From the NCBI GenBank assembly GCA_002269645.1, contig NIVC01000784.1, positions 1 to 53,771 of the forward strand: a stretch of 53,771 nt of DNA, given 5' to 3'. This DNA comes from Macrostomum lignano (taxonomy: Eukaryota). How positions within the stretch are numbered: position 1 is the first letter of the stretch; each line of letters begins with the position of its first letter. The position numbers and the translations under genes were made by a program. This document shows positions 1 to 49,248 of the stretch, one piece after another. The notes under the pieces are model-generated. The model searched no databases. It was not told where the DNA came from and was given only the letters and a program-made list of their open reading frames with translations.

Positions 1-3000
1 TTGATCGGATTCTGTACCTGCCATAGTGGTTGCCGCACCAGCACTGGTAGCCATTTTGCACACACGAAGAAGCTGATATTTCCTGGCTTTGCACGCCTTG
101 TAGCACTTTGGCACAGTAACTGATCCGGAGAGAACCAGCTTTCTAAGATCTCTGGAGCTCTTGTCCAGATAGCAGCCGAGATGCTTCAATCCGCGGCACT
201 GAAAGCGGTAGCGACAGACTACTACTGTACACATTATTTGCTGTCGTTTATGTAAACAACTTATGAGAAAGGCTCAACTCTTGGACGCCCACGCTTTCGC
301 TGATGATATTTAATGCATTTAAAGTTTCAAGATGTCAGACTAATTGCGCACAATTTCAAATTAGCCACCTTATATTGCTTGAAACTACTCGTATTTATGG
401 AAGGAAGAGAAACGGCGCGCGCAATTAGTGAGGCATCGCATAGTTCTCAACTGAGAGCTGCCAAACTAATATAAACACGAGCTAGGTGGACAAAAAAGCA
501 ATCAATTGCGAATCTGTACTGTTGTACTCACGACGAACAGGCTTGCTGCCGATTCCAGTCGAGTAGACAGAGTTTCTCCAAGAGCCGCCGCAGGTTCGTC
601 TTTGTCGCCTCTACAGCGCGTTCTGCACTGCTTTGCATTGACTCGGCCAAAGCTGCCATATTTTGTTGCCGCAGGTGCACGCAGATCCAGCCTGGAGGCC
701 AAAGTACCTGTAGCCGCGAGACTTGCAGTACTTCAGACAGTACGCCTTTGTGGTCCGGTGACCGGCGCCGTGTACAAGGGGCAAGTCGCGCTTCGAATTG
801 TCGCGGAAGCAGCCAAGTAGGGTAACTCCGGAGGCGTGCTCTTCGAGTCCGGTAGCGTACACGTCGTTTCTCCAGGAGCCGCCACAGTAGGTCGTCTTGT
901 CTCCTCTGCACTGGTAGCGGCACTCGCGTTTGTCGCGTCGGCCGTAGCGACCGTAGTGTGTTGCCGCACCAGCACTGTTTTCCTATCTGAACGCCAAAGA
1001 ATCGGAATCCCTTTTTCTTGCACAGTCCGTAGCACCTTCCAACAGTTATGCTGCCTTTTCCTCCCACAGTTGGAAGATCGCGCCTCCGGCCGTCAACAAA
1101 GCAGCCAATGTGAGACATTCCAGGTGCTTAAAAAAGAAATAGTGGCACACGCAGGTCAGTAAAACCCCAGCTGGTTGGCTCCTAATCCAAGACACGGACA
1201 GAGCCAGCCCGTTATAATTTTTATATATGTCTATAACTTGGGTGTCTTTGGTCTTCTGATCTCTCACTACTAAGCTCAATAATAACTTCAATTACCAATG
1301 TGAGAGCCAAATAACTAAGGCGGCGGATTCGACTAACTTTTCCTGATGATGCAATCAATTGATGTTAACTTACTGACCGTTGTATTGTATTTGGTGTTCG
1401 CAATCTCGAGATTAACTCAAGTCTATGGTAGGTTCTAATTGTTCGGGGGAACCGAAGGTTCAGTCTGTTGTAGGGAAAGGATGTCTACTTTTCATTAGCT
1501 AAGACTGGGATCGTGTGCTCAGCTTTTGCTTGCTGGAGCGCGTTCATTGGTTGGAAATACATTCAAACTGGATTGAAACTTTCAGGGCCAAAATGTCTCA
1601 CTTCACCGTTTTACTTTACAAAATGTCTTATGTACCCTACGAGCCTACGAGCGAGCGTGGAAGCGAATTTTCGTTTGACTGCACACTTACTCTTGAAGCT
1701 CTTGGGCTTCAGTCCGGTTGTGAAGACACTGTTCCTCCATGGTCCACCACATTTGGACCTCTTGTCGCCCTTACAGGTGGACCTGGCGCAATCCTTGCTC
1801 GACGCTCTTCCATACCGACCGACGGTGTTTCCGCAGGTGCACGCATTGCCGTTTTGCAGACCAAAGTACCTGTAGCCTTGGCTCGACAATAGCGGAAGCA
1901 GTAAGCCTTTGTCGTCTTGTAGTTGGCAGTGTAAACTACCGGCAAATCCCTGTTGCGATTGTCCTTAAAGCAGCCGACGTACTTCACTCCGGCCGCTGGA
2001 AGGTCAGAAGGGCATCATTTTAGTTACGACTACGAATATTAAAGGCTCCAACTAGATTTAATCGGCTGGCATCGCCCACCTCTCTTGGATTAGTCTAGTC
2101 TATAAACCATTGTTCATTGAGACATCTATTAGTAGTGCTGCTGGCTAACTGGCTAGATGGCGCAACGAAAAACAGCAGTACACTAGGATTGCTTGGATCT
2201 CCAGAAAGCTACAAGCGTAAACCTGTTGACAGACTCGGTTACCTTTGCTGGCGACGACAACACCCGTTGCGTACACGTCGTTTCTCCAGGAGCCGCCACA
2301 GTAGGTCGTCTTGTCTCCTCTGCACTGGTAGCGGCACTCGCGTTTGTCGCGTCGGCCGTAGCGACCGTAGTGGTTGCCGCACCAGCACTGTTTTCCTATC
2401 TGAACGCCAAAGAATCGGAATCCCTTTTTCTTGCATAGTCCGTAGCACCTTCCAACAGTCATGCTGCCTTTTCCTCCCAGAGTTGGAAGATCGCGTCTCC
2501 GGCCGTCAACAAAGCAGCCAATGTGAGACATTCCAGGTGCTTAAAAGAGAAATAGTGGGCACATGCAGGTCAGCAAAACCCCATCCAAACCGTACAGAGC
2601 AATCTCGTTTTACATTCAAAAATATCTAATATACCGTACGAGCCTACGAGCGAGCGTGGAAAGCGAATTTTCTGCTTGACTGCACACTTACTCTTGAAGC
2701 TCTTGGGCTTCAGTCCGGTTGTGAAGACGCTGTTCCTCCATGGTCCACCACATTTGGACCTCTTGTCGCCCTTACAGGTGGACCTGGCGCAATCCTTGCT
2801 CTTCGCTTTTCCATACCGACCGACGGTGTTTCCGCAGGTGCACGCATTGCCGTTTTGCAGACCAAAGTACCTGTAGCCCTTGGCTCGACAATAGCGGAAG
2901 CAGTAAGCCTTTGTCGTCTTGTAGTTGGCAGTGTAAACTACCGGCAAATCCCTGTAGCGATTGTCCTTGAAGCAGCCGACGTACTTCACTCCGGCCGCTG

Positions 3001-6000
3001 GAAGATCAGAAGGGCATCATTTTAGTTACGACTACGAATATTAAAGGCTCCAACTAGATTCAATCGGCTGGCATCGCCCACCTCTCTTGGATTAGTCTAG
3101 TCTATAAACCATTGTTCATTGAGACATCTATTAGTAGTGCTGCTGGCTAAATGGCTAGATGGCGCAACGAAAAACAGCAGTACACTAGGATTGCTTGGAT
3201 CTCCAGAAAGCTACAAGCGTAAACCTGTTGACAGACTCGGTTACCTTTGCTGGCGACGACAACACCCGTCGCGTAGACATTGTTTCTCCACGCGCCTCCG
3301 CAGTAGGTCGACTTGTCTCCTCTGCACTGTACTCTGCACTCCAAGTTTGATCGGATTCTGTACCTGCCATAGTGGTTGCCGCACCAGCACTGGTAGCCAT
3401 TTTGCACACCGAAGAAGCGATATTTCCTGGCTTTGCACGCCTTGTAGCACTTTGGCACAGTAACTGATCCGGAGAGAACCAGCTTTCTAAGATCTCTGGA
3501 GCTCTTGTCCAGATAGCAGCCGAGATGCTTCAATCCGGGCACTGAAAGCGGTAGCGACAGACTACTACTGTACACATTATTTGCTGTCGTTTATGTAAAC
3601 AACTTATGAGAAAGGCTCAACTCTTGGACGCCCACGCTTTCGCTGATGATATTTAATGCATTTAAAGTTTCAAGATGTCAGACTAATTTGCGCACAATTT
3701 CAAATTAGCCACCTTATATTGCTTGAAACTACTCGTATTTATGGAAGGAAGAGAAACGGCGCGCGCAATTAGTGAGGCATCGCATAGTTCTCAACTGAGA
3801 GCTGCAAACTAATATAAACACGAGCTAGGTGGACAAAAAAGCAATCAATTGCGAATCTGTACTGTTGTACTCACGACGAACAGGCTTGCTGCCGATTCCA
3901 GTCGAGTAGACAGAGTTTCTCCAAGAGCCGCCGCAGGTTCGTCTTTTGTCGCCTCTACAGCGCGTTCTGCACTGCTTTGCATTGACTCGGCCAAAGCTGC
4001 CATATTTGTTGCCGCAGGTGCACGCAGATCCAGCCTGGAGGCCAAAGTACCTGTAGCCGCGAGACTTGCAGTACTTCAGACAGTACGCCTTTGTGGTCCG
4101 GTGACCGGCGCCGTGTACAAGGGGCAAGTCGCGCTTCGAATTGTCGCGGAAGCAGCCAAGTAGGGTAACTCCGGAGGCGTGCTCTTCGAGTCCGGTAGCG
4201 TACACGTCGTTTCTCCAGGAGCCGCCACAGTAGGTCGTCTTGTCTCCTCTGCACTGGTAGCGGCACTCGCGTTTGTCGCGTCGGCCGTAGCGACCGTAGT
4301 GGTTGCCGCACCAGCACTGTTTTCCTATCTGAACGCCAAAGAATCGGAATCCCTTTTTCTTGCATAGTCCGTAGCACCTTCCAACAGTCATGCTGCCTTT
4401 TCCTCCCACAGTTGGAAGATCGCGTCTCCGGCCGTCAACAAAGCAGCCAATGTGAGACATTCCAGGTGCTTAAAAGAGAAATAGTGGGCACATGCAGGTC
4501 AGCAAAACCCCATCCAAACCGTACAGAGCAATCTCGTTTTTATACATTCAAAAATATCTAATGTACCGTACGAGCCTACGAGCGAGCGTGGAAAGCGAAT
4601 TTTCTGCTTGACTGCACACTTACTCTTGAAGCTCTTGGGCTTCAGTCCGGTTGTGAAGACGCTGTTCCTCCATGGTCCACCACATTTGGACCTCTTGTCG
4701 CCCTTACAGGTGGACCTGGCGCAATCCTTGCTCTTCGCTTTTCCATACCGACCGACGGTGTTTCCGCAGGTGCACGCATTGCCGTTTTGCAGACCAAAGT
4801 ACCTGTAGCCCTTGGCTCGACAATAGCGGAAGCAGTAAGCCTTTGTCGTCTTGTAGTTGGCAGTGTAAACTACCGGCAAATCCCTGTAGCGATTGTCCTT
4901 GAAGCAGCCGACGTACTTCACTCCGGCCGCTGGAAGTCAGAAGGGCGTCATTTTAGTTACGACTACGATATTAAAGGCTCCAACTAGATTCAATCGGCTG
5001 GCATCGCCCACCTCTCTTGGATTAGTCTAGTCTATAAACCATTGTTCATTGAGACATCTATTAGTAGTGCTGCTGGCTAAATGGCTAGATGGCGCAACGA
5101 AAAACAGCAGTACACTAGGATTGCTTGGATCTCCAGAAAGCTACAAGCGTAAACCTGTTGACAGACTCGGTTACCTTTGCTGGCGACGACAACACCCGTC
5201 GCGTAGACATTGTTTCTCCATGCGCCTCCGCAGTAGGTCGACTTGTCTCCTCTGCACTGTACTCTGCACTCCAAGTTTGATCGGATTCTGTACCTGCCAT
5301 AGTGGTTGCCGCACCAGCACTGGTAGCCATTTTGCACACCGAAGAAGCGATATTTCCTGGCTTTGCACGCCTTGTAGCACTTTGGCACAGTAACTGATCC
5401 GGAGAGAACCAGCTTTCTAAGATCTCTGGAGCTCTTGTCCAGATAGCAGCCGAGATGCTTCAATCCGGGCACTGAAAGCGGTAGCGACAGACTACTACTG
5501 TACACATTATTTGCTGTCGTTTATGTAAACAACTTATGAGAAAGGCTCAACTCTTGGACGCCCACGCTTTCGCTGATGATATTTAATGCATTTAAAGTTT
5601 CAAGATGTCAGACTAATTTGCGCACAATTTCAAATTAGCCACCTTATATTGCTTGAAACTACTCGTATTTATGGAAGGAAGAGAAACGGCGCGCGCAATT
5701 AGTGAGGCATCGCATAGTTCTCAACTGAGAGCTGCAAACTAATATAAACACGAGCTAGGTGGACAAAAAAGCAATCAATTGCGAATCTGTACTGTTGTAC
5801 TCACGACGAACAGGCTTGCTGCCGATTCCAGTCGAGTAGACAGAGTTTCTCCAAGAGCCGCCGCAGGTTCGTCTTTTGTCGCCTCTACAGCGCGTTCTGC
5901 ACTGCTTTGCATTGACTCGGCCAAAGCTGCCATATTTGTTGCCGCAGGTGCACGCAGATCCAGCCTGGAGGCCAAAGTACCTGTAGCCGCGAGACTTGCA

Positions 6001-9000
6001 GTACTTCAGACAGTACGCCTTTGTGGTCCGGTGACCGGCGCCGTGTACAAGGGGCAAGTCGCGCTTCGAATTGTCGCGGAAGCAGCCAAGTAGGGTAACT
6101 CCGGAGGCGTGCTCTTCGAGTCCGGTAGCGTACACGTCGTTTCTCCAGGAGCCGCCACAGTAGGTCGTCTTGTCTCCTCTGCACTGGTAGCGGCACTCGC
6201 GTTTGTCGCGTCGGCCGTAGCGACCGTAGTGGTTGCCGCACCAGCACTGTTTTCCTATCTGAACGCCAAAGAATCGGAATCCCTTTTTCTTGCATAGTCC
6301 GTAGCACCTTCCAACAGTCATGCTGCCTTTTCCTCCCACAGTTGGAAGATCGCGTCTCCGGCCGTCAACAAAGCAGCCAATGTGAGACATTCCAGGTGCT
6401 TAAAAGAGAAATAGTGGGCACATGCAGGTCAGCAAAACCCCATCCAAACCGTACAGAGCAATCTCGTTTTACATTCAAAAATATCTAATATACCGTACGA
6501 GCCTACGAGCGAGCGTGGAAAGCGAATTTTCTGCTTGACTGCACACTTACTCTTGAAGCTCTTGGGCTTCAGTCCGGTTGTGAAGACGCTGTTCCTCCAT
6601 GGTCCACCACATTTGGACCTCTTGTCGCCCTTACAGGTGGACCTGGCGCAATCCTTGCTCTTCGCTTTTCCATACCGACCGACGGTGTTTCCGCAGGTGC
6701 ACGCATTGCCGTTTTGCAGACCAAAGTACCTGTAGCCCTTGGCTCGACAATAGCGGAAGCAGTAAGCCTTTGTCGTCTTGTAGTTGGCAGTGTAAACTAC
6801 CGGCAAATCCCTGTAGCGATTGTCCTTGAAGCAGCCGACGTACTTCACTCCGGCCGCTGGAAGTCAGAAGGGCGTCATTTTAGTTACGACTACGAATATT
6901 AAAGGCTCCAACTAGATTCAATCGGCTGGCATCGCCCACCTCTCTTGGATTAGTCTAGTCTATAAACCATTGTTCATTGAGACATCTATTAGTAGTGCTG
7001 CTGGCTAAATGGCTAGATGGCGCAACGAAAAACAGCAGTACACTAGGATTGCTTGGATCTCCAGAAAGCTACAAGCGTAAACCTGTTGACAGACTCGGTT
7101 ACCTTTGCTGGCGACGACAACACCCGTCGCGTAGACATTGTTTCTCCACGCGCCTCCGCAGTAGGTCGACTTGTCTCCTCTGCACTGTACTCTGCACTCC
7201 AAGTTTGATCGGATTCTGTACCTGCCATAGTGGTTGCCGCACCAGCACTGGTAGCCATTTTGCACACCGAAGAAGCGATATTTCCTGGCTTTGCACGCCT
7301 TGTAGCACTTTGGCACAGTAACTGATCCGGAGAGAACCAGCTTTCTAAGATCTCTGGAGCTCTTGTCCAGATAGCAGCCGAGATGCTTCAATCCGGGCAC
7401 TGAAAGCGGTAGCGACAGACTACTACTGTACACATTATTTGCTGTCGTTTATGTAAACAACTTATGAGAAAGGCTCAACTCTTGGACGCCCACGCTTCGC
7501 TGATGATATTTAATGCATTTAAAGTTTCAAGATGTCAGACTAATTTGCGCACAATTTCAAATTAGCCACCTTATATTGCTTGAAACTACTCGTATTTATG
7601 GAAGGAAGAGAAACGGCGCGCGCAATTAGTGAGGCATCGCATAGTTCTCAACTGAGAGCTGCAAACTAATATAAACACGAGCTAGGTGGACAAAAAAGCA
7701 ATCAATTGCGAATCTGTACTGTTGTACTCACGACGAACAGGCTTGCTGCCGATTCCAGTCGAGTAGACAGAGTTTCTCCAAGAGCCGCCGCAGGTTCGTC
7801 TTTTGTCGCCTCTACAGCGCGTTCTGCACTGCTTTGCATTGACTCGGCCAAAGCTGCCATATTTGTTGCCGCAGGTGCACGCAGATCCAGCCTGGAGGCC
7901 AAAGTACCTGTAGCCGCGAGACTTGCAGTACTTCAGACAGTACGCCTTTGTGGTCCGGTGACCGGCGCCGTGTACAAGGGGCAAGTCGCGCTTCGAATTG
8001 TCGCGGAAGCAGCCAAGTAGGGTAACTCCGGAGGCGTGCTCTTCGAGTCCGGTAGCGTACACGTCGTTTCTCCAGGAGCCGCCACAGTAGGTCGTCTTGT
8101 CTCCTCTGCACTGGTAGCGGCACTCGCGTTTGTCGCGTCGGCCGTAGCGACCGTAGTGGTTGCCGCACCAGCACTGTTTTCCTATCTGAACGCCAAAGAA
8201 TCGGAATCCCTTTTTCTTGCACAGTCCGTAGCACCTTCCAACAGTTATGCTGCCTTTTCCTCCCACAGTTGGAAGATCGCGCCTCCGGCCGTCAACAAAG
8301 CAGCCAATGTGAGACATTCCAGGTGCTTAAAAAAGAAATAGTGGGCACACGCAGGTCAGTAAAACCCCAGCTGGTTGGCTCCTAATCCAAGACACGGACA
8401 GAGCCAGCCCGTTGAAATTTTTTATATATGTCTATAACTTGGGTGTCTTTGGTCTTCTGATCTCTCACTACTAAGCTCAATAATAACTTCAATTACCAAT
8501 GTGAGAGCCAAATAACTAAGGCGGCGGATTCGACTAACTTTTCCTGATGATGCAATCAATTGATGTTAACTTACTGACCGTTGTATTGTATTTGGTGTTC
8601 GCAATCTCGAGATTAACTCAAGTCTATGGTAGGTTCTAATTGTTCGGGGGAACCGAAGGTTCAGTCTGTTGTAGGGAAAGGATGTCTACTTTTCATTAGC
8701 TAAGACTGGGATCGTGTGCTCAGCTTTTGCTTGCTGGAGCGCGTTCATTGGTTGGAAATACATTCAAACTGGATTGAAACTTTCAGGGCCAAAATGTATC
8801 ACTTCACCGTTTTACTTTACAAAATGTCTTATGTACCCTACGAGCCTACGAGCGAGCGTGGAAAGCGAATTTTCGTTTGACTGCACACTTACTCTTGAAG
8901 CTCTTGGGCTTCAGTCCGGTTGTGAAGACGCTGTTCCTCCATGGTCCACCACATTTGGACCTCTTGTCGCCCTTACAGGTGGACCTGGCGCAATCCTTGC

Positions 9001-12000
9001 TCGACGCTCTTCCATACCGACCGACGGTGTTTCCGCAGGTGCACGCATTGCCGTTTTGCAGACCAAAGTACCTGTAGCCCTTGGCTCGACAATAGCGGAA
9101 GCAGTAAGCCTTTGTCGTCTTGTAGTTGGCAGTGTAAACTACCGGCAAATCCCTGTGCGATTGTCCTTGAAGCAGCCGACGTACTTCACTCCGGCCGCTG
9201 GAAGGTCAGAAGGGCGTCATTTTAGTTACGACTACGAATATTAAAGGCTCCAACTAGATTCAATCGGCTGGCATCGCCCACCTCTCTTGGATTAGTCTAG
9301 TCTATAAACCATTGTTCATTGAGACATCTATTAGTAGTGCTGCTGGCTAATGGCTAGATGGCGCAACGAAAAACAGCAGTACACTAGGATTGCTTGGATC
9401 TCCAGAAAGCTACAAGCGTAAACCTGTTGACAGACTCGGTTACCTTTGCTGGCGACGACAACACCCGTTGCGTACACGTCGTTTCTCCAGGAGCCGCCAC
9501 AGTAGGTCGTCTTGTCTCCTCTGCACTGGTAGCGGCACTCGCGTTTGTCGCGTCGGCCGTAGCGACCGTAGTGGTTGCCGCACCAGCACTGTTTTCCTAT
9601 CTGAACGCCAAAGAATCGGAATCCCTTTTTCTTGCATAGTCCGTAGCACCTTCCAACAGTCATGCTGCCTTTTCCTCCCACAGTTGGAAGATCGCGTCTC
9701 CGGCCGTCAACAAAGCAGCCAATGTGAGACATTCCAGGTGCTTAAAAGAGAAATAGTGGGCACATGCAGGTCAGCAAAACCCCATCCAAACCGTACAGAG
9801 CAATCTCGTTTTTATACATTCAAAAATATCTAATATACCGTACGAGCCTACGAGCGAGCGTGGAAAGCGAATTTTCTGCTTGACTGCACACTTACTCTTG
9901 AAGCTCTTGGGCTTCAGTCCGGTTGTGAAGACGCTGTTCCTCCATGGTCCACCACATTTGGACCTCTTGTCGCCCTTACAGGTGGACCTGGCGCAATCCT
10001 TGCTCTTCGCTTTTCCATACCGACCGACGGTGTTTCCGCAGGTGCACGCATTGCCGTTTTGCAGACCAAAGTACCTGTAGCCCTTGGCTCGACAATAGCG
10101 GAAGCAGTAAGCCTTTGTCGTCTTGTAGTTGGCAGTGTAAACTACCGGCAAATCCCTGTAGCGATTGTCCTTGAAGCAGCCGACGTACTTCACTCCGGCC
10201 GCTGGAAGTCAGAAGGGCGTCATTTTAGTTACGACTACGATATTAAAGGCTCCAACTAGATTCAATCGGCTGGCATCGCCCACCTCTCTTGGATTAGTCT
10301 AGTCTATAAACCATTGTTCATTGAGACATCTATTAGTAGTGCTGCTGGCTAAATGGCTAGATGGCGCAACGAAAAACAGCAGTACACTAGGATTGCTTGG
10401 ATCTCCAGAAAGCTACAAGCGTAAACCTGTTGACAGACTCGGTTACCTTTGCTGGCGACGACAACACCCGTCGCGTAGACATTGTTTCTCCATGCGCCTC
10501 CGCAGTAGGTCGACTTGTCTCCTCTGCACTGTACTCTGCACTCCAAGTTTGATCGGATTCTGTACCTGCCATAGTGGTTGCCGCACCAGCACTGGTAGCC
10601 ATTTTGCACACCGAAGAAGCGATATTTCCTGGCTTTGCACGCCTTGTAGCACTTTGGCACAGTAACTGATCCGGAGAGAACCAGCTTTCTAAGATCTCTG
10701 GAGCTCTTGTCCAGATAGCAGCCGAGATGCTTCAATCCGGGCACTGAAAGCGGTAGCGACAGACTACTACTGTACACATTATTTGCTGTCGTTTATGTAA
10801 ACAACTTATGAGAAAGGCTCAACTCTTGGACGCCCACGCTTTCGCTGATGATATTTAATGCATTTAAAGTTTCAAGATGTCAGACTAATTTGCGCACAAT
10901 TTCAAATTAGCCACCTTATATTGCTTGAAACTACTCGTATTTATGGAAGGAAGAGAAACGGCGCGCGCAATTAGTGAGGCATCGCATAGTTCTCAACTGA
11001 GAGCTGCAAACTAATATAAACACGAGCTAGGTGGACAAAAAAGCAATCAATTGCGAATCTGTACTGTTGTACTCACGACGAACAGGCTTGCTGCCGATTC
11101 CAGTCGAGTAGACAGAGTTTCTCCAAGAGCCGCCGCAGGTTCGTCTTTTGTCGCCTCTACAGCGCGTTCTGCACTGCTTTGCATTGACTCGGCCAAAGCT
11201 GCCATATTTGTTGCCGCAGGTGCACGCAGATCCAGCCTGGAGGCCAAAGTACCTGTAGCCGCGAGACTTGCAGTACTTCAGACAGTACGCCTTTGTGGTC
11301 CGGTGACCGGCGCCGTGTACAAGGGGCAAGTCGCGCTTCGAATTGTCGCGGAAGCAGCCAAGTAGGGTAACTCCGGAGGCGTGCTCTTCGAGTCCGGTAG
11401 CGTACACGTCGTTTCTCCAGGAGCCGCCACAGTAGGTCGTCTTGTCTCCTCTGCACTGGTAGCGGCACTCGCGTTTGTCGCGTCGGCCGTAGCGACCGTA
11501 GTGGTTGCCGCACCAGCACTGTTTTCCTATCTGAACGCCAAAGAATCGGAATCCCTTTTTCTTGCATAGTCCGTAGCACCTTCCAACAGTCATGCTGCCT
11601 TTTCCTCCCACAGTTGGAAGATCGCGTCTCCGGCCGTCAACAAAGCAGCCAATGTGAGACATTCCAGGTGCTTAAAAGAGAAATAGTGGGCACATGCAGG
11701 TCAGCAAAACCCCATCCAAACCGTACAGAGCAATCTCGTTTTACATTCAAAAATATCTAATGTACCGTACGAGCCTACGAGCGAGCGTGGAAAGCGAATT
11801 TTCTGCTTGACTGCACACTTACTCTTGAAGCTCTTGGGCTTCAGTCCGGTTGTGAAGACGCTGTTCCTCCATGGTCCACCACATTTGGACCTCTTGTCGC
11901 CCTTACAGGTGGACCTGGCGCAATCCTTGCTCTTCGCTTTTCCATACCGACCGACGGTGTTTCCGCAGGTGCACGCATTGCCGTTTTGCAGACCAAAGTA

Positions 12001-24000: not shown

Positions 24001-25165
24001 CTGTTTTCCTATCTGAACGCCAAAGAATCGGAATCCCTTTTTCTTGCACAGTCCGTAGCACCTTCCAACAGTTATGCTGCCTTTTCCTCCCACAGTTGGA
24101 AGATCGCGCCTCCGGCCGTCAACAAAGCAGCCAATGTGAGACATTCCAGGTGCTTAAAAAAGAAATAGTGGGCACACGCAGGTCAGTAAAACCCCAGCTG
24201 GTTGGCTCCTAATCCAAGACACGGACAGAGCCAGCCCGTTGAAATTTTTTATATATGTCTATAACTTGGGTGTCTTTGGTCTTCTGATCTCTCACTACTA
24301 AGCTCAATAATAACTTCAATTACCAATGTGAGAGCCAAATAACTAAGGCGGCGGATTCGACTAACTTTTCCTGATGATGCAATCAATTGATGTTAACTTA
24401 CTGACCGTTGTATTGTATTTGGTGTTCGCAATCTCGAGATTAACTCAAGTCTATGGTAGGTTCTAATTGTTCGGGGGAACCGAAGGTTCAGTCTGTTGTA
24501 GGGAAAGGATGTCTACTTTTCATTAGCTAAGACTGGGATCGTGTGCTCAGCTTTTGCTTGCTGGAGCGCGTTCATTGGTTGGAAATACATTCAAACTGGA
24601 TTGAAACTTTCAGGGCCAAAATGTATCACTTCACCGTTTTACTTTACAAAATGTCTTATGTACCCTACGAGCCTACGAGCGAGCGTGGAAAGCGAATTTT
24701 CTGCTTGACTGCACACTTACTCTTGAAGCTCTTGGGCTTCAGTCCGGTTGTGAAGACGCTGTTCCTCCATGGTCCACCACATTTGGACCTCTTGTCGCCC
24801 TTACAGGTGGACCTGGCGCAATCCTTGCTCGACGCTTTTCCATACCGACCGACGGTGTTTCCGCAGGTGCACGCATTGCCGTTTTGCAGACCAAAGTACC
24901 TGTAGCCCTTGGCTCGACAATAGCGGAAGCAGTAAGCCTTTGTCGTCTTGTAGTTGGCAGTGTAAACTACCGGCAAATCCCTGTAGCGATTGTCCTTGAA
25001 GCAGCCGACGTACTTCACTCCGGCCGCTGGAAGGTCAGAAGGGCGTCATTTTAGTTACGACTACGATATTAAAGGCTCCAACTAGATTCAATCGGCTGGC
25101 ATCGCCCACCTCTCTTGGATTAGTCTAGTCTATAAACCATTGTTCATTGAGACATCTATTAGTAG
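1..25165 (-). repeat. Higher-order repeat block: AL-D-B-AS-D-B-AS-C (~5.28 kb) x3, one 7.2-kb variant with an extra AS-D-B, and a partial unit
   Basis: Unit boundaries at 25165, 19887, 14612, 9337 and 2135 (lengths 5278, 5275, 5275, 7202). AL and AS are exon A followed by the long (~568 nt) or short (~154 nt) intron. Confidence 0.9.
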
Positions 25166-28100: not shown

Positions 28101-31100
28101 CTCGTATTTATGGAAGGAAGAGAAACGGCGCGCGCAATTAGTGAGGCATCGCATAGTTCTCAACTGAGAGCTGCAAACTAATATAAACACGAGCTAGGTG
28201 GACAAAAAAGCAATCAATTGCGAATCTGTACTGTTGTACTCACGACGAACAGGCTTGCTGCCGATTCCAGTCGAGTAGACAGAGTTTCTCCAAGAGCCGC
28301 CGCAGGTTCGTCTTTTGTCGCCTCTACAGCGCGTTCTGCACTGCTTTGCATTGACTCGGCCAAAGCTGCCATATTTGTTGCCGCAGGTGCACGCAGATCC
28401 AGCCTGGAGGCCAAAGTACCTGTAGCCGCGAGACTTGCAGTACTTCAGACAGTACGCCTTTGTGGTCCGGTGACCGGCGCCGTGTACAAGGGGCAAGTCG
28501 CGCTTCGAATTGTCGCGGAAGCAGCCAAGTAGGGTAACTCCGGAGGCGTGCTCTTCGAGTCCGGTAGCGTACACGTCGTTTCTCCAGGAGCCGCCACAGT
28601 AGGTCGTCTTGTCTCCTCTGCACTGGTAGCGGCACTCGCGTTTGTCGCGTCGGCCGTAGCGACCGTAGTGGTTGCCGCACCAGCACTGTTTTCCTATCTG
28701 AACGCCAAAGAATCGGAATCCCTTTTTCTTGCACAGTCCGTAGCACCTTCCAACAGTTATGCTGCCTTTTCCTCCCACAGTTGGAAGATCGCGCCTCCGG
28801 CCGTCAACAAAGCAGCCAATGTGAGACATTCCAGGTGCTTAAAAAAGAAATAGTGGGCACACGCAGGTCAGTAAAACCCCAGCTGGTTGGCTCCTAATCC
28901 AAGACACGGACAGAGCCAGCCCGTTGAAATTTTTTATATATGTCTATAACTTGGGTGTCTTTGGTCTTCTGATCTCTCACTACTAAGCTCAATAATAACT
29001 TCAATTACCAATGTGAGAGCCAAATAACTAAGGCGGCGGATTCGACTAACTTTTCCTGATGATGCAATCAATTGATGTTAACTTACTGACCGTTGTATTG
29101 TATTTGGTGTTCGCAATCTCGAGATTAACTCAAGTCTATGGTAGGTTCTAATTGTTCGGGGGAACCGAAGGTTCAGTCTGTTGTAGGGAAAGGATGTCTA
29201 CTTTTCATTAGCTAAGACTGGGATCGTGTGCTCAGCTTTTGCTTGCTGGAGCGCGTTCATTGGTTGGAAATACATTCAAACTGGATTGAAACTTTCAGGG
29301 CCAAAATGTATCACTTCACCGTTTTACTTTACAAAATGTCTTATGTACCCTACGAGCCTACGAGCGAGCGTGGAAAGCGAATTTTCCGTTTGACTGCACA
29401 CTTACTCTTGAAGCTCTTGGGCTTCAGTCCGGTTGTGAAGACGCTGTTCCTCCATGGTCCACCACATTTGGACCTCTTGTCGCCCTTACAGGTGGACCTG
29501 GCGCAATCCTTGCTCTTCGCTTTTCCATACCGACCGACGGTGTTTCCGCAGGTGCACGCATTGCCGTTTTGCAGACCAAAGTACCTGTAGCCCTTGGCTC
29601 GACAATAGCGGAAGCAGTAAGCCTTTGTCGTCTTGTAGTTGGCAGTGTAAACTACCGGCAAATCCCTGTAGCGATTGTCCTTGAAGCAGCCGACGTACTT
29701 CACTCCGGCCGCTGGAAGGTCAGAAGGGCGTCATTTTAGTTACGACTACGAATATTAAAGGCTCCAACTAGATTCAATCGGCTGGCAACGCCCACCTCTC
29801 TTGGATTAGTCTAGTCTATAAACCATTGTTCATTGAGACATCTATTAGTAGTGCTGCTGGCTAAATGGCTAGATGGCGCAACGAAAAACAGCAGTACACT
29901 AGGATTGCTTGGATCTCCAGAAAGCTACAAGCGTAAACCTGTTGACAGACTCGGTTACCTTTGCTGGCGACGACAACACCCGTCGCGTAGACATTGTTTC
30001 TCCACGCGCCTCCGCAGTAGGTCGACTTGTCTCCTCTGCACTGTACTCTGCACTCCAAGTTTGATCGGATTCTGTACCTGCCATAGTGGTTGCCGCACCA
30101 GCACTGGTAGCCATTTTGCACACCGAAGAAGCGATATTTCCTGGCTTTGCACGCCTTGTAGCACTTTGGCACAGTAACTGATCCGGAGAGAACCAGCTTT
30201 CTAAGATCTCTGGAGCTCTTGTCCAGATAGCAGCCGAGATGCTTCAATCCGGGCACTGAAAGCGGTAGCGACAGACTACTACTGTACACATTATTTGCTG
30301 TCGTTTATGTAAACAACTTATGAGAAAGGCTCAACTCTTGGACGCCCACGCTCTCGCTGATGATATTTAATGCATTTAAAGTTTCAAGATGTCAGACTAA
30401 TTTGCGCACAATTTCAAAATAGCCACCTTATATTGCTTGAAACTACTCGTATTTATGGAAGGAAGAGAAACGGCGCGCGCAATTAGTGAGGCATCGCATA
30501 GTTCTCAACTGAGAGCTGCAAACTAATATAAACACGAGCTAGGTGGACAAAAAAGCAATCAATTGCGAATCTGTACTGTTGTACTCACGACGAACAGGCT
30601 TGCTGCCGATTCCAGTCGAGTAGACAGAGTTTCTCCAAGAGCCGCCGCAGGTTCGTCTTTTGTCGCCTCTACAGCGCGTTCTGCACTGCTTTGCATTGAC
30701 TCGGCCAAAGCTGCCATATTTGTTGCCGCAGGTGCACGCAGATCCAGCCTGGAGGCCAAAGTACCTGTAGCCGCGAGACTTGCAGTACTTCAGACAGTAC
30801 GCCTTTGTGGTCCGGTGACCGGCGCCGTGTACAAGGGGCAAGTCGCGCTTCGAATTGTCGCGGAAGCAGCCAAGTAGGGTAACTCCGGAGGCGTGCTCTT
30901 CGAGTCCGGTAGCGTACACGTCGTTTCTCCAGGAGCCGCCACAGTAGGTCGTCTTGTCTCCTCTGCACTGGTAGCGGCACTCGCGTTTGTCGCGTCGGCC
31001 GTAGCGACCGTAGTGGTTGCCGCACCAGCACTGTTTTCCTATCTGAACGCCAAAGAATCGGAATCCCTTTTTCTTGCACAGTCCGTAGCACCTTCCAACA

Positions 31101-34100
31101 GTTATGCTGCCTTTTCCTCCCACAGTTGGAAGATCGCGCCTCCGGCCGTCAACAAAGCAGCCAATGTGAGACATTCCAGGTGCTTAAAAAAGAAATAGTG
31201 GGCACACGCAGGTCAGTAAAACCCCAGCTGGTTGGCTCCTAATCCAAGACACGGACAGAGCCAGCCCGTTGAAATTTTTTATATATGTCTATAACTTGGG
31301 TGTCTTTGGTCTTCTGATCTCTCACTACTAAGCTCAATAATAACTTCAATTACCAATGTGAGAGCCAAATAACTAAGGCGGCGGATTCGACTAACTTTTC
31401 CTGATGATGCAATCAATTGATGTTAACTTACTGACCGTTGTATTGTATTTGGTGTTCGCAATCTCGAGATTAACTCAAGTCTATGGTAGGTTCTAATTGT
31501 TCGGGGGAACCGAAGGTTCAGTCTGTTGTAGGGAAAGGATGTCTACTTTTCATTAGCTAAGACTGGGATCGTGTGCTCAGCTTTTGCTTGCTGGAGCGCG
31601 TTCATTGGTTGGAAATACATTCAAACTGGATTGAAACTTTCAGGGCCAAAATGTATCACTTCACCGTTTTACTTTACAAAATGTCTTATGTACCCTACGA
31701 GCCTACGAGCGAGCGTGGAAAGCGAATTTTCCGTTTGACTGCACACTTACTCTTGAAGCTCTTGGGCTTCAGTCCGGTTGTGAAGACGCTGTTCCTCCAT
31801 GGTCCACCACATTTGGACCTCTTGTCGCCCTTACAGGTGGACCTGGCGCAATCCTTGCTCTTCGCTTTTCCATACCGACCGACGGTGTTTCCGCAGGTGC
31901 ACGCATTGCCGTTTTGCAGACCAAAGTACCTGTAGCCCTTGGCTCGACAATAGCGGAAGCAGTAAGCCTTTGTCGTCTTGTAGTTGGCAGTGTAAACTAC
32001 CGGCAAATCCCTGTAGCGATTGTCCTTGAAGCAGCCGACGTACTTCACTCCGGCCGCTGGAAGGTCAGAAGGGCGTCATTTTAGTTACGACTACGAATAT
32101 TAAAGGCTCCAACTAGATTCAATCGGCTGGCAACGCCCACCTCTCTTGGATTAGTCTAGTCTATAAACCATTGTTCATTGAGACATCTATTAGTAGTGCT
32201 GCTGGCTAAATGGCTAGATGGCGCAACGAAAAACAGCAGTACACTAGGATTGCTTGGATCTCCAGAAAGCTACAAGCGTAAACCTGTTGACAGACTCGGT
32301 TACCTTTGCTGGCGACGACAACACCCGTCGCGTAGACATTGTTTCTCCACGCGCCTCCGCAGTAGGTCGACTTGTCTCCTCTGCACTGTACTCTGCACTC
32401 CAAGTTTGATCGGATTCTGTACCTGCCATAGTGGTTGCCGCACCAGCACTGGTAGCCATTTTGCACACCGAAGAAGCGATATTTCCTGGCTTTGCACGCC
32501 TTGTAGCACTTTGGCACAGTAACTGATCCGGAGAGAACCAGCTTTCTAAGATCTCTGGAGCTCTTGTCCAGATAGCAGCCGAGATGCTTCAATCCGGGCA
32601 CTGAAAGCGGTAGCGACAGACTACTACTGTACACATTATTTGCTGTCGTTTATGTAAACAACTTATGAGAAAGGCTCAACTCTTGGACGCCCACGCTCTC
32701 GCTGATGATATTTAATGCATTTAAAGTTTCAAGATGTCAGACTAATTTGCGCACAATTTCAAAATAGCCACCTTATATTGCTTGAAACTACTCGTATTTA
32801 TGGAAGGAAGAGAAACGGCGCGCGCAATTAGTGAGGCATCGCATAGTTCTCAACTGAGAGCTGCAAACTAATATAAACACGAGCTAGGTGGACAAAAAAG
32901 CAATCAATTGCGAATCTGTACTGTTGTACTCACGACGAACAGGCTTGCTGCCGATTCCAGTCGAGTAGACAGAGTTTCTCCAAGAGCCGCCGCAGGTTCG
33001 TCTTTTGTCGCCTCTACAGCGCGTTCTGCACTGCTTTGCATTGACTCGGCCAAAGCTGCCATATTTGTTGCCGCAGGTGCACGCAGATCCAGCCTGGAGG
33101 CCAAAGTACCTGTAGCCGCGAGACTTGCAGTACTTCAGACAGTACGCCTTTGTGGTCCGGTGACCGGCGCCGTGTACAAGGGGCAAGTCGCGCTTCGAAT
33201 TGTCGCGGAAGCAGCCAAGTAGGGTAACTCCGGAGGCGTGCTCTTCGAGTCCGGTAGCGTACACGTCGTTTCTCCAGGAGCCGCCACAGTAGGTCGTCTT
33301 GTCTCCTCTGCACTGGTAGCGGCACTCGCGTTTGTCGCGTCGGCCGTAGCGACCGTAGTGGTTGCCGCACCAGCACTGTTTTCCTATCTGAACGCCAAAG
33401 AATCGGAATCCCTTTTTCTTGCACAGTCCGTAGCACCTTCCAACAGTTATGCTGCCTTTTCCTCCCACAGTTGGAAGATCGCGCCTCCGGCCGTCAACAA
33501 AGCAGCCAATGTGAGACATTCCAGGTGCTTAAAAAAGAAATAGTGGGCACACGCAGGTCAGTAAAACCCCAGCTGGTTGGCTCCTAATCCAAGACACGGA
33601 CAGAGCCAGCCCGTTGAAATTTTTTATATATGTCTATAACTTGGGTGTCTTTGGTCTTCTGATCTCTCACTACTAAGCTCAATAATAACTTCAATTACCA
33701 ATGTGAGAGCCAAATAACTAAGGCGGCGGATTCGACTAACTTTTCCTGATGATACAATCAATTGATGTTAACTTACTGACCGTTGTATTGTATTTGGTGT
33801 TCGCAATCTCGAGATTAACTCAAGTCTATGGTAGGTTCTAATTGTTCGGGGGAACCGAAGGTTCAGTCTGTTGTAGGGAAAGGATGTCTACTTTTCATTA
33901 GCTAAGACTGGGATCGTGTGCTCAGCTTTTGCTTGCTGGAGCGCGTTCATTGGTTGGAAATACATTCAAACTGGATTGAAACTTTCAGGGCCAAAATGTA
34001 TCACTTCACCGTTTTACTTTACAAAATGTCTTATGTACCCTACGAGCCTACGAGCGAGCGTGGAAAGCGAATTTTCTGCTTGACTGCACACTTACTCTTG

Positions 34101-37100
34101 AAGCTCTTGGGCTTCAGTCCGGTTGTGAAGACGCTGTTCCTCCATGGTCCACCACATTTGGACCTCTTGTCGCCCTTACAGGTAGACCTGGCGCAATCCT
34201 TGCTCGACGCTCTTCCATACCGACCGACGGTGTTTCCGCAGGTGCACGCATTGCCGTTTTGCAGACCAAAGTACCTGTAGCCCTTGGCTCGACAATAGCG
34301 GAAGCAGTAAGCCTTTGTCGTCTTGTAGTTGGCAGTGTAAACTACCGGCAAATCCCTGTAGCGATTGTCCTTAAAGCAGCCGACGTACTTCACTCCGGCC
34401 GCTGGAAGGTCAGAAGGGCGTCATTTTAGTTACGACTACGAATATTAAAGGCTCCAACTAGATTCAATCGGCTGGCATCGATTAGTCTAGTCTATAAACC
34501 ATTGTTCATTGAGACATCTATTAGTAGATATAGTTTAATATTATTATAGTTTAATTATAGTTTAATTAATAGATTAGTTTAATAGTTTTTAAAAGCCGAA
34601 TTTAGATAGTGGTATTGCACAATAAAAAATAATCTGGCACTCACGCGATGAAACTCGTTTGCATCGACGGTGCCTGACAATTCGACAACGGCATTCTGCA
34701 ATTATATTATTGAAATCGTTACTGTCAGGTAACTGATGTTTGTGGAGTCCCTTTTATAGTAAATTATTATCCAATTTAACAGGCTCCGCGCCTGTTTCAT
34801 ACCATAAGTAGTAAATTACGAGTAGGTTTCAATGCCACGGATAATCCTCTTGGCTGCAACTGTTGCTCGTATGTAAGGTATGTTAAAAAGAAATACTCAC
34901 TGCCTCTGAGAGCCTTTTTGAGCGCCGACGGGCTTCTTGGGAATGCGCTGAAGCTGATTCTTCCTTTTACGGCGCGTCTGAGGAACTCCATCAACTGTGG
35001 ATAGAAATACGAGTAGAAAATACTTATACGTTTGTCGTTGTTCTTGTTGTCCGTGAGCAAGCCATGCCATAGCTGAATCTCTAATAAAACGCCCTACCTT
35101 GTTGAAAGTGCCAGATCGTAGTCGGGAGACCTCTCCAAAAGACTTCCGGGCCAACTGCTTAAACTCTGGCGCTTTTCCACACATGTTTCCGCTCTCGACG
35201 GTAAACACTCGAATTCGCTTCCTCTTCGCCAGTGAAGACACCTGGCCCACTCGTCTCTTGTCCTTGGCTGAAGCGTCAGTAAACAGGAGCATGACGGAGT
35301 TCGAGTCCGCGCTCTTTGCAGCATCCAGAGCTCCTGACATAGCGTACTCGGACAGTCACCGCCTCCTCTGGCAGACAATCTTTTCAGGAAGTTTCTCACA
35401 GCAGTGATACTCCTCGTCTTGATTACTCGCCTCACATACGGATCGCCAAAGGTTGCAACAACATAGTTGCTAAATCGAGTGTTAGCAGAGAGAATTCGCC
35501 GGATGTTGCTCTTTACCGAGTTAATCACGCTTCCCATGCTTCCGGTAATGTCAATAACAAAGATCAGCGAGCCCAACTTCCGTCCAGGAGATATCGGGCA
35601 CAGCGGCAGGTGCGACGCGAGGTCACAGACAACCTTGATCCTGATGGGCATGCTGCAAAAAATATTATACTTTTTCTTCATTGTGATTACACATGCAACG
35701 TAAAACTCAGTCGGCGATAGGAAATGTATATTTTATCGAAATCAAAGTGATTTTCATTATAAACAGCTTCAGAATACCATGACATACGACTAGCGAAACT
35801 TACACCTAGGCTTCTTGCTAGGAACCGATCGCGAGCCGATGAACTTGTAGCTAAGCCTGTATCTGCCGTAGCGTCTCGTCTTGACGCCGTTGCGTCTAGT
35901 GGATCGGTACGAGCTGCGACCCCTCAACACTCGAACACGGATGTACTTTGTCTGGCCGTTCCTCACAATTCCTGCATGTACGGCGGCCTTGCTAAGCGAC
36001 GAGTCGGCAGTGTAGATCCCGCTCCCCCACACGTTTCCTCTCAATCGACCAGTCACTCGGAACTCGAAGCACTGACCGACCTTGGACTTGTAGCTCGACA
36101 GGCTTGACGGTGTAGATCTCACCCGTTTGCAGCCTAGCGCTCGTGGGCATTTAACGTTTCATAATATTATTCAAAATTCGAGTGTAAGTTTTACGAGCTA
36201 GTGTTGCATATTAGAAACGGCAACTGCATATTAAAAACTTTAAATCCATATCGAATTTAATAAAGTAAGCCAAGTGAGCATTTGTAAAACACAATTGAAT
36301 TTGGTGAGCACAAAATGCGTAAGGAGTTAAACTGATGACAAAGGCATCGGGATATTTTTAGATCAGGGACTCTGATCCGTGTGGACACCGTCAGGATTCA
36401 TCAAAATGGGCTATATTACAGATGCATCAAGGAAACTTGGATATACGCTCGTATAGTGTTTGGGGTAGTGCCAGAATGCTAAACTCTGGGCACTAACTAA
36501 GTAACCTATATTATCCGCACGCATCGTTAATGCACATCATTCTCTCCCGTTTTCTTCGCTTTGTCTGGCCACCTCTCTAAGCTTTCATGTACGTAGTACG
36601 TAACTGTATTTTGTAATTCTATCGGCCACCACTCATGTCATCATTAAATAGGCTACTTGCAAGTTGAAATAGACCATAAATTTTTGCCGACCACAGTCAA
36701 GGAGAACTAAACGTACGAGCTAGTAATGTTTATTTTAGATCCACTGAGCCTAGAGAGACAGCGATTTTAAAGCTAACCCTTTCATTGGTGGACCCTGCAG
36801 TTCATGTGCTGTCTACAAGGGCAAGCGGCGCGTATATATCGATACTGTACTCTCTTTTCTGGCCAGCGTCATGTCAAGCGTTTTCAGGTGTTGATGCGGA
36901 GAATGTACTCACGGGAGCCAGTCGACCGAGTTGCATAGACATTATTTCTCCAGTGAGAGCCGCACTTCTCTCTGGAGTTGCCTCTGCAGGCCATGTTGCA
37001 CTCGCGTCCTGGTCGCTTTCCGTGCTTGCCGTACGAGTTGCCGCACCAGCACTCCTTGGAGAACTGCACACCGAAGTAGCGGTACGAGCTGCACAGACGG

Positions 37101-40350: not shown

Positions 40351-40359
40351 CTAAGAAGA

Positions 40360-42300: not shown

Positions 42301-42611
42301 GCCAATGTGAATTACCACAGTAGCAATACGCCTATCTCGCCAATGTGATTTACCACAGTAGCAATACGCCTATCTCGCCAATGTGATTTAGCACAGTAGC
42401 AATACGCCTATCTCGCCAATGTGATTTAGCACAGTAGCAATACGCCTATCTCGCCAATGTGATTTACCACAGTAGCAATACGCCTATCTCGCCAATGTGA
42501 ATTACCACAGTAGCAATACGCCTATCTCGCCAATGTGATTTACCACAGTAGCAATACGCCTATCTCGCCAATGTGATTTACCACAGTAGCAATACGCCTA
42601 TCTCGCCAATG
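42301..42611. repeat. 38-bp minisatellite, 8 full copies plus a partial
   Basis: Unit GCCAATGTGATTTACCACAGTAGCAATACGCCTATCTC; copies start every 38 nt from 42301 to 42605. Confidence 0.97.
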
Positions 42612-49240: not shown

Positions 49241-49248
49241 GCCCCTGC
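49201..49248 (+). promoter_or_regulatory. Candidate -1 programmed ribosomal frameshift signal
   Basis: G GGA AAA heptamer in the gag frame, 6-nt spacer, stem AGGGGC (49214-19)/GCCCCT (49241-46); the pol ORF is in the -1 frame. Confidence 0.7.

What the first reader, a model, noticed from the sequence alone, without database searches (positions are those of the whole stretch)
1..34527. A protein-coding gene organised like centromeric satellite: monomers grading into higher-order repeats
Seen: in transcription order the pattern is (AL-D-B)x4 at ~2,345 bp, (AL-D-B-AS-D-B-AS-C)x3 at ~5,275 bp, one 7,202-bp unit with an extra ~1,929-bp AS-D-B, then a further unit cut by the window. Introns are as homogenised as exons. 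Inference: this reflects very recent hierarchical unequal crossing-over, so the locus should behave as a coding VNTR with protein length differing between alleles in steps of about 400 or 900 aa.
Basis: partly seen in the sequence, partly recalled or inferred. Interest (0 to 1): 0.72.

Follow-up and report, generated by a model that had tools for sequence, protein, structure and literature searches.

The report
Giant WSC-repeat gene with nested tandem repeats
A flatworm (Macrostomum lignano) gene for a huge secreted sugar-binding-type protein consists of at least 65 nearly identical WSC domains laid out as tandem repeats within tandem repeats; the pattern is real in this assembly, but it is a known kind of gene architecture and the array runs off the end of an error-prone contig.

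Summary
On the minus strand, 34527→1 reads exactly (AL-D-B)x4, (AL-D-B-AS-D-B-AS-C)x3, one 7.2-kb unit with an extra AS-D-B, then a truncated unit. Periods are 2345, 5275, 7204 and 1930 bp. All 49 exons have GT/AG sites and phase 1-1. Introns and exons are equally homogenised (0.33% substitutions each).

The window is Macrostomum lignano Mlig_3_7 contig NIVC01000784.1, positions 1-53771. The array is therefore cut by the contig end, not just by the window. The gene encodes signal peptide, WSC, LCCL, VWA and then at least 64 further WSC domains. It is over 6,700 aa, with pI about 10.

- The protein steps are 399, 201 and 999 aa, not about 900.
- The long- and short-intron monomer types are older lineages. 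Nine fixed differences sit in about 164 nt around the intron.
- Exon C arose by a microhomology deletion.
- The "higher-order" units are defined by structural variants, not by diverged monomers.

Most inter-copy differences are 1-nt indels, as expected from PacBio consensus error. Copy number is unverified and allele-length variation (VNTR behaviour) is untested. A related genome holds the same A-D-B unit as a 1977-bp tandem repeat, with dN/dS of 0.09-0.17.

This is a new member of a known kind (compare NBPF Olduvai triplets, LPA, Mlig-ap2).

The parts
37776..37845 (-). Exon 1: start codon and signal peptide (MLPTMAQAGWCLLFAICLGGITA), phase-1 GTAAGT donor.
   Evidence: The annotated M. lignano protein P0003 aligns at 100% to 37866-37777. 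The sequence was read directly.
36911..37207 (-). Exon 2: single-copy, diverged WSC domain ('WSC0'). Boundaries are approximate.
   Evidence: Pfam WSC, E=2.2e-19. P0003 alignment.
35805..36131 (-). Exon 3: LCCL domain. Boundaries are approximate.
   Evidence: Pfam LCCL, E=2.5e-15. P0001 and P0002 align at 100%.
35098..35653 (-). Exon 4: VWA (VWA_4) domain. The frame is broken twice, near 35597 and near 35349, where ML2-derived protein models (same PacBio reads) read through in one frame.
   Evidence: Pfam VWA_4 hits lie in two frames. The DNA was read. P0001 and P0002 read straight through (RTCRCAPISPGRK and GGGDCPEYAMSGAL). The DNA context fits a missing base in a short C run and in a GG pair, which is my inference.
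34528..35097 (-). Linker region with one or two small exons between the VWA domain and the array. The exon model is uncertain: database models use different frames.
25027..34527 (-). Monomeric zone: four AL-D-B units of 2,345 bp (A exons at 34401, 32056, 29711, 27366). Homology to the B>A intron begins at 34527, 126 nt upstream of the first A exon.
9198..25026 (-). Three 5,275-bp higher-order units, each AL-D-B-AS-D-B-AS-C and each encoding 999 aa: 25026-19748, 19747-14473, 14472-9198.
   Evidence: HOR2 and HOR3 differ by 1 substitution.
1996..9197 (-). A 7.2-kb variant unit, AL-D-B-AS-D-B-AS-D-B-AS-C, with one extra 1,930-bp AS-D-B.
1..1995 (-). A further AL-D-B unit cut by the end of the contig. 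It carries roughly a dozen singleton 1-nt indels and several singleton substitutions, so the sequence quality is low.
   Evidence: Variant table. Window coordinates equal contig coordinates, so position 1 is the contig end.
31751..32056 (-). Representative exon A: 306 nt, one WSC domain, phase 1-1.
30589..31182 (-). Representative exon D: 594 nt, two WSC domains, phase 1-1.
29959..30255 (-). Representative exon B: 297 nt, one WSC domain, phase 1-1.
19995..20291 (-). Representative exon C: a hybrid of about the first 271 nt of exon D and the last ~25 nt of exon B, joined at the microhomology TACGC. It forms one WSC domain.
   Evidence: Pfam WSC, E=1.3e-19.
22223..22376 (-). Representative short (S) A>D intron, about 154 nt. 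With the first ~103 nt of the following D exon it forms the island of fixed L/S differences.
31183..31750 (-). Representative long (L) A>D intron, 568 nt.

Best explanation
The region is the 5' end and most of the body of a Macrostomum lignano gene, transcribed on the minus strand. It encodes a very large secreted protein: signal peptide, one WSC domain, an LCCL domain, a VWA domain, and then a tandem array of at least 64 more WSC domains. The protein is over 6,700 aa and its 3' end is missing because the contig ends.

The ancestral repeat is a three-exon, four-WSC unit (A-D-B, 399 aa). All its exons are phase 1-1, so any whole-exon or whole-unit gain or loss stays in frame.

Inferred history:
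1. Two versions of the unit arose that differ in the A>D intron (568 vs about 154 nt) and in a small flanking island of substitutions.
2. One microhomology-mediated deletion fused D to B and created the one-domain exon C.
3. The composite AL-D-B-AS-D-B-AS-C block was then itself amplified in tandem.
4. Later exchange added one extra AS-D-B to one block.
5. Continuing unequal exchange and gene conversion keep exons and introns alike at about 99.7-100% substitution identity. Neighbouring units are the most similar.

Inferred function: the product is probably a disulphide-rich, strongly basic, multivalent glycan- or polyanion-binding structural or secretory protein. Its tissue is unknown. The copy number given by this assembly should be treated as a minimum and as approximate.
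For: **Structure and order:**

**Coding potential**
- All 49 array exons have AG acceptors and GT donors.
- 44 of 49 have lengths divisible by 3 and contain no in-frame stop.
- Splice phases were read directly.

**Domains and composition**
- WSC, LCCL and VWA_4 all score above the Pfam cut-offs.
- The closest solved WSC domain is that of Kremen1.
- The repeat unit has pI 9.98, 20.5% K+R, 8% Cys, 14% Gly and 7% Tyr.

**Identity of the locus**
- L001 is 100% identical to the window with identical coordinates. This places the window on NIVC01000784.1 of GCA_002269645.1.
- The transcript-based annotation (PMC5730564) includes a spliced signal-WSC-LCCL model (P0003) and a 931-aa WSC product inside the array.

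**History**
- Fixed L/S differences cluster around the A>D intron.
- The exon C junction lies in a microhomology.
- Similarity between units falls with distance along the array.
- A-exon haplotypes are mosaic across L and S units.

**Long-term function**
- A related genome holds D-, B- and A-like exons in the same order on a collapsed circular 1977-bp short-read contig, which indicates a tandem repeat.
- Its introns do not align to the window's, while its exons are 71-75% identical at nucleotide level.
- dN/dS against that array is 0.17, 0.15 and 0.09 for A, D and B.

**The C module in a second assembly**
- The ML2-derived protein P0016 contains the A-C junction sequence 'WRNDVYATGVVVASK'.
Against: - The contig ends inside the array. 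Its last 2 kb carries many singleton indels.
- The assembly is PacBio RS-era reads, Canu and Pilon. REAPR scored only 64% of its bases as error-free, and the sequenced line carries extra large chromosomes, which leaves the assembly redundant (PMC5730564). The number of 5.3-kb units, and possibly the join between the monomeric and higher-order zones, may therefore be wrong.
- ML2 and Mlig_3_7 share the same PacBio reads, so P0016 is not independent read evidence.
- Three array exons outside the last unit, and the VWA exon, carry 1-nt frame breaks. If these are real, this copy would be a pseudogene.
- No expression pattern, protein evidence or population data were available.
- The proposed function rests on domain content and composition only.
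Confidence: 0.7

Rival explanations
1. The array exists, but the detailed picture is partly an assembly product. Under this reading the copy numbers are wrong. The apparent grading from monomers into higher-order units could also be wrong. It could come from mis-layout of near-identical repeats, or from a chimeric join of arrays from different haplotypes or duplicated chromosome copies.
For: - The contig terminates in the array and its end is of poor quality.
- Differences between copies are dominated by indels. HOR2 and HOR3 differ by 1 substitution but 10 indel columns.
- One intron variant (inD column 169) separates the first five units from all later ones. That could mark a join.
- The assembly paper reports only 64% error-free bases and substantial duplication-driven redundancy in the sequenced line.
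Against: - Type-specific and position-specific substitutions form a coherent pattern that falls off with distance. Random mis-layout would not be expected to produce this.
- The structural markers (L intron, S intron, C exon) are large enough to be read in single noisy long reads, which constrains the local order.
- The C junction also appears in the ML2 assembly's protein set.
- A related genome independently shows the unit as a tandem repeat.
Confidence: 0.25
2. The locus is a decaying pseudogene or dead coding satellite. Under this reading the frame breaks are real and the array is no longer translated.
For: There are 1-nt frame breaks in the VWA exon (two), in the A exons at 27366 and 9197, in the D exon at 16944, and several in the last unit.
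Against: - The frame breaks outside the last unit are all single-base deletions. Most sit in short homopolymer or dinucleotide runs.
- ML2-derived proteins read through both VWA sites.
- 44 of 49 exons are intact with no in-frame stop.
- Among copies there are about 6 synonymous and 3-4 non-synonymous changes, counted by me from the variant table.
- Long-term dN/dS is 0.09-0.17.
- Annotated transcript-based models exist on the locus.
Confidence: 0.07
3. The 8-exon block is a functional super-repeat kept by selection on protein architecture, as in nebulin or titin super-repeats. It would not be a neutral by-product of unequal exchange.
For: The block is repeated with a fixed internal order. A-exon protein variants (RASS and KAKS) mostly track position within the block.
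Against: - Blocks are nearly identical at intron and synonymous sites as well, which indicates recency rather than maintenance.
- The domains within a block are almost the same sequence as in the monomeric zone.
- One block already deviates by a whole extra sub-unit.
Confidence: 0.08

Closest known systems
NBPF genes: Olduvai (DUF1220) triplets, a ~4.8-kb higher-order repeat of three ~1.6-kb coding units (PMC9584774).
   Same: A protein-coding gene whose exon-intron repeat units are organised into tandem higher-order units, with introns included in the homogenised block. In NBPF the copy number is variable.
   Different: NBPF monomers within a triplet are clearly diverged subtypes. Here the sub-units are at least 99.6% alike and are told apart mainly by an intron indel and one exon fusion. 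The domain family and organism are also different.
Human LPA kringle IV-2 coding VNTR: 5.5-kb two-exon unit (own knowledge).
   Same: In-frame multi-exon units with near-identical introns, and protein length set by copy number.
   Different: LPA has a single-level repeat with no nested higher-order unit, and its length polymorphism is demonstrated. Polymorphism is untested here.
Mlig-ap2 adhesive protein of the same species: 21 x 255-aa followed by 25 x 221-aa repeats (PMC6410801).
   Same: Same organism. A giant secreted, Cys-rich protein with two successive repeat regimes along one gene.
   Different: Mlig-ap2 has vWD, TIL, LDL and TSP-1 domains and no WSC, LCCL or VWA. The present gene is not Mlig-ap1 or Mlig-ap2.
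Alpha-satellite higher-order repeats at primate centromeres (own knowledge).
   Same: A formal pattern of a monomeric zone next to multi-monomer units that are more alike than the monomers, and similarity that decays with distance.
   Different: Satellite monomers differ by 20-40% and are non-coding. Here monomer divergence is 0.4% or less and the DNA is 51% coding and under purifying selection.
Multi-WSC secreted proteins. These include small M. lignano WSC proteins expressed in the prostate gland or proposed as seminal-fluid candidates (PMC4490696, PMC6953679), and fungal multi-WSC lectins or adhesins (own knowledge).
   Same: Secreted proteins built from tandem WSC domains, which are putative carbohydrate binders.
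   Different: Those proteins have 2 to a few WSC domains. This one has at least 65, plus an LCCL-VWA head.
Cochlin and vitrin: LCCL plus VWA extracellular matrix proteins (own knowledge).
   Same: The N-terminal LCCL followed by VWA.
   Different: Cochlin and vitrin have no WSC domains and no repeat array.

Membership tests
WSC-domain proteins (Pfam PF01822) | Match to the WSC profile above the curated cut-off. | tested here: met
   Exons A, D (two stretches), B, C and the single-copy exon 2 score 60.9-122.6 bits against a cut-off of 27.8.
WSC-domain proteins (Pfam PF01822) | Eight conserved cysteines per ~90-aa domain. | tested here: met
   Counted directly in the translated A, D1, D2 and B domains. 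The unit is 8.0% Cys, which is 32 Cys in 399 aa or 8 per domain.
Higher-order repeat in the satellite sense | A multi-monomer block repeated head-to-tail at least twice. | tested here: met
   Three 5,275-bp blocks plus one 7.2-kb variant.
Higher-order repeat in the satellite sense | Blocks are much more similar to each other than the constituent monomers are to each other. | tested here: not met
   Blocks differ by 1-10 substitutions per 5.3 kb, and L-type or S-type monomers by 0-9 per ~2 kb. These ranges overlap. Monomer types are distinguished by a ~414-nt intron length difference, a ~925-bp exon-fusing deletion and about 10 fixed substitutions.
Coding VNTR | Tandem units that can be gained or lost in frame. 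| tested here: met
   All exons are phase 1-1 with lengths of 306, 594, 297 and 297 nt. The array itself contains an in-frame extra AS-D-B.
Coding VNTR | Array length differs between alleles or individuals. | not testable with these tools
   No reads, second haplotype or other line of M. lignano could be retrieved. Exact-protein look-ups of the D-exon ORF found nothing.
M. lignano adhesive proteins Mlig-ap1 and Mlig-ap2 | The published domain sets. Mlig-ap1 has KR-regions, C-type lectin, vWD/C8/TIL and EGF. Mlig-ap2 has vWD, TIL, LDL and TSP-1 with 255- and 221-aa repeats. | tested here: not met
   The Pfam search of the exon translations found only WSC, LCCL and VWA. The published architectures are in PMC6410801.
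Cochlin/vitrin family | LCCL followed by VWA domain(s) as the whole architecture. | tested here: not met
   LCCL and VWA are present, but they are preceded by one WSC domain and followed by at least 64.

The most novel reading that the evidence does not exclude
This would be by far the longest WSC-domain array described. It would be a polycationic, multivalent lectin-like giant protein of a flatworm secretory gland. Small WSC proteins in this species are prostate or seminal-fluid candidates. Its domain number would really vary between individuals in 201-, 399- and 999-aa steps, which would make it a coding VNTR. The two-tier turnover seen here is block amplification plus conversion that stops at a heterologous intron. 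In such a gene it could be studied, and possibly linked to reproductive or adhesive phenotypes.
Probability: 0.15. Interest if true: 0.55.

Novelty: new member of a known kind. Interest (0 to 1): 0.38.

Why it matters
If the array is as assembled, it is a clean, small-scale model of how tandem coding arrays evolve.
- It has symmetric-phase exons.
- It has two old monomer types whose divergence survives only next to an intron length difference.
- It has an exon-fusing microhomology deletion.
- It shows recent amplification of a composite block.

For flatworm biology it flags an unstudied giant secreted WSC/LCCL/VWA protein. WSC proteins in this species have been tied to prostate and seminal fluid, and giant repetitive proteins to adhesion.

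It also warns annotators. The locus is fragmented into partial gene models because of single-base indels, and it ends at a contig break.

Tried and rejected
- **Tandem Repeats Finder** cannot see periods above 500 bp. It reported only three unrelated minisatellites, so self-BLAST was used instead.
- **Identity with Mlig-ap1 or Mlig-ap2:** considered because the protein is giant, basic and Cys-rich. Rejected on domain content.
- **Literature searches:** Macrostomum plus WSC or LCCL returned only small prostate or seminal-fluid WSC proteins and an unrelated LCCL protein of another flatworm. Nothing on this gene was found.
- **Short-read contigs of the locus:** I looked for M. lignano contigs through exact look-ups of the two D-exon ORF variants. 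None was on record.
- **Is the extra ~414 nt of the long intron a mobile element?** No copy occurs elsewhere in the window and there are no terminal inverted repeats. This is inconclusive because the rest of the genome could not be searched.
- **Aligning the relative's A>D intron to the L or S intron:** no meaningful similarity was found. Only its length (~153 nt) supports the view that S is ancestral.
- **Simple deletion of L to give S:** rejected as the whole story because the retained flanks carry fixed differences.


Full report
**1. What the window is**

A protein search with the single-copy N-terminal exons returned only Macrostomum lignano proteins at high identity. The contig that carries one of them, P0003, is NIVC01000784.1 (99,570 bp) of assembly GCA_002269645.1 (Mlig_3_7). 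The fetched piece is 100% identical to window 25564-47866, and its record coordinates are the same numbers. So the window is positions 1-53771 of that contig, and window position 1 is a contig end.

Mlig_3_7 was built with Canu from RS-era PacBio reads. These are the same reads as the earlier ML2 assembly. It was polished with Pilon, and REAPR rated only 64% of its bases error-free. The sequenced DV1 line carries additional large chromosomes. The annotation is transcript-based (PMC5730564).

**2. The observation**

Self-BLAST gives long diagonals at offsets of 2344, 5272, 7204 and 1929 bp with 99.3-99.6% identity. The array edge lies at 34527.

Every WSC-domain start on the minus strand was listed. 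All exons were then located from their splice motifs. In transcription order the modules are:
- (AL-D-B) x4
- (AL-D-B-AS-D-B-AS-C) x3
- AL-D-B-AS-D-B-AS-D-B-AS-C
- AL-D-(B, cut)

Sizes:
- Exon A is 306 nt (one WSC), D is 594 nt (two WSC), B is 297 nt and C is 297 nt.
- The A>D intron is 568 nt (L) or 152-155 nt (S). The D>B intron is 333 nt and the B>A intron is 247 nt.

All 49 exons have AG acceptors and GT donors. 44 have lengths divisible by 3 and no in-frame stop. Reading the junctions shows every exon is phase 1-1.

The units encode 399 aa (AL-D-B or AS-D-B), 201 aa (AS-C), 999 aa (the 5,275-bp block) and 1,398 aa (the 7.2-kb block).

Mean pairwise substitution divergence, weighted by length, is 0.33% for exons and 0.33% for introns. 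Introns are therefore as homogenised as exons.

**3. The gene**

Exon 1 encodes a start codon and a hydrophobic signal peptide. The next exons encode a diverged WSC domain, an LCCL domain and a VWA_4 domain. The array adds 64 WSC domains (6,290 aa) before the contig ends. The protein therefore exceeds about 6,700 aa, and its C-terminus is unknown.

The repeat unit has pI about 10, 20.5% K+R, 8% Cys, 14% Gly and 7% Tyr. The nearest solved WSC domain is that of Kremen1.

The gene is not Mlig-ap1 or Mlig-ap2, which have different domains. Mlig-ap2 does show that two successive repeat regimes in one giant gene already have a precedent in this species.

The only Macrostomum literature on WSC domains concerns small proteins. 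One two-WSC transcript is needed for a prostate-gland staining pattern (PMC4490696). Mlig-pro46 and other seminal-fluid candidates resemble WSCD2 (PMC6953679).

From domains and composition I infer a secreted, disulphide-rich, polycationic, multivalent glycan- or polyanion-binding protein of some gland. This is an inference, not a demonstration.

**4. How the array was built**

(a) *Two old monomer types.* L-linked and S-linked units differ by fixed substitutions at 3 sites just before the intron breakpoint, 3 sites in the last 44 nt of the intron and 3 sites in the first 103 nt of exon D. Only one more fixed difference occurs in the remaining ~1.76 kb.

That is about 5.5% divergence in a ~164-nt island against about 0.06% elsewhere. 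The L/S split is therefore much older than the present homogeneity. The likely reason it survives is that exchange tracts do not cross the ~414-nt heterology. A diverged relative has an A>D intron of about 153 nt, which weakly suggests S is ancestral and L carries an insertion. No transposon signature was found in the extra sequence.

(b) *Origin of exon C.* Exon C matches exon D up to about nt 271 and exon B over its last ~25 nt. The join lies in the 5-nt microhomology TACGC, and one junction base matches neither parent. D and B differ at many positions around this point. This therefore looks like an illegitimate, in-frame deletion of about 925 bp rather than homologous unequal crossing-over.

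(c) *Amplification of the composite block.* HOR2 and HOR3 differ by a single substitution in 5,275 bp. HOR1 differs from them by 6-8, and HOR4 by 6-10 from the other three blocks. Among L monomers, neighbours differ by 0-2 and distant ones by up to 9. A-exon haplotypes are mosaic between L and S units. Local duplication or unequal exchange plus gene conversion explains all of this.

(d) *The satellite analogy is only formal.* Block-to-block and monomer-to-monomer divergence overlap. The 'higher order' is defined by two structural variants, not by diverged monomers.

**5. Is it functional?**

Two Logan short-read contigs from other samples (L002 and L003) are both 2,007 bp. Each has a 30-nt prefix equal to its suffix, and they are rotations of one another. 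This is the signature of a collapsed 1,977-bp tandem repeat.

That unit carries D-, B- and A-like exons in the same order, with 67%, 79% and 66% amino-acid identity. Only the exons align to the window at nucleotide level (71-75%); the introns do not. dN/dS between the two arrays is 0.15 (D), 0.09 (B) and 0.17 (A), with saturated dS.

The four-WSC unit is thus old, tandemly arrayed in at least one other genome, and under purifying selection. The species behind those samples is unknown.

**6. Caveats**

- The last unit (1-1995) carries roughly a dozen singleton indels, as expected at a thin contig end.
- Differences between copies are dominated by indels elsewhere as well (1 substitution against 10 indel columns between HOR2 and HOR3).
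- The frame breaks outside the last unit are single-base deletions, mostly in short homopolymer or dinucleotide runs.
- ML2-derived proteins read through both VWA breaks.

The frame breaks are therefore most likely consensus errors, though this was not proven. Because the repeats are about 99.8% identical, the number of 5.3-kb blocks rests on structural markers in individual long reads. The join between the two zones rests on the same evidence. Both need spanning reads.

ML2's protein P0016 contains the A-C junction, but it comes from the same reads. Allele-length variation could not be tested.

**7. Comparison and verdict**

Coding genes with tandem exon-intron units, including nested higher-order units, are already known. 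Examples are the NBPF Olduvai triplets (PMC9584774), LPA KIV-2 and nebulin super-repeats (own knowledge), and Mlig-ap2 in this species.

This is a neat new example with an unusually large WSC array. It shows an informative conversion-resistant island and a microhomology exon fusion. It is not a new kind of system.

- Interest: 0.38
- Novelty: new member of a known kind

Noticed in passing
window 48309-53771 (+): A Ty3/gypsy-type LTR retroelement, cut by the window end. It has a gag zinc knuckle, aspartyl protease, reverse transcriptase, RNase H and integrase. The domains are spread over several overlapping reading frames, so the element is either degenerate or affected by the same assembly indels. 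Only pieces were examined.
   Followed up: partly
window 49282-50210: A 30-bp x 31 minisatellite (88% matches). It lies in frame inside the retroelement ORF between gag and protease and encodes a 10-aa repeat of the form HQ[HP]PVSGTA[SP].
   Followed up: no
window 42301-42611 and 47266-47608: Two very clean intergenic minisatellites: 38 bp x 8.2 and 30 bp x 11.4, each with 98% matches.
   Followed up: no
window 39899-40354 (+): An isolated 151-aa ORF with CCHC zinc-knuckle motifs. It is probably a gag remnant of another retroelement, and it lies in a stretch of strongly positive AT skew.
   Followed up: no
L002, L003 (Logan SRR31628425, SRR31628392), whole contigs: These are circularly permuted 2,007-bp contigs with 30-nt terminal overlaps, which indicates a collapsed 1,977-bp tandem repeat. 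The unit holds a diverged A-D-B WSC unit from an unidentified related genome.
   Followed up: yes
window 35597 and 35349 (VWA exon); 27366, 16944 and 9197 (array exons): Single-base deletions break the reading frame. They split the NCBI gene models into partial fragments (P0003 ends at the first one). ML2-derived proteins read through the two VWA sites.
   Followed up: partly
P0001, P0002 (UniRef, ML2-derived M. lignano proteins): These models show VWA-LCCL-VWA in one protein. This suggests either a mis-joined model or a tandem duplication of the LCCL-VWA head in the ML2 assembly or in another genomic copy.
   Followed up: no
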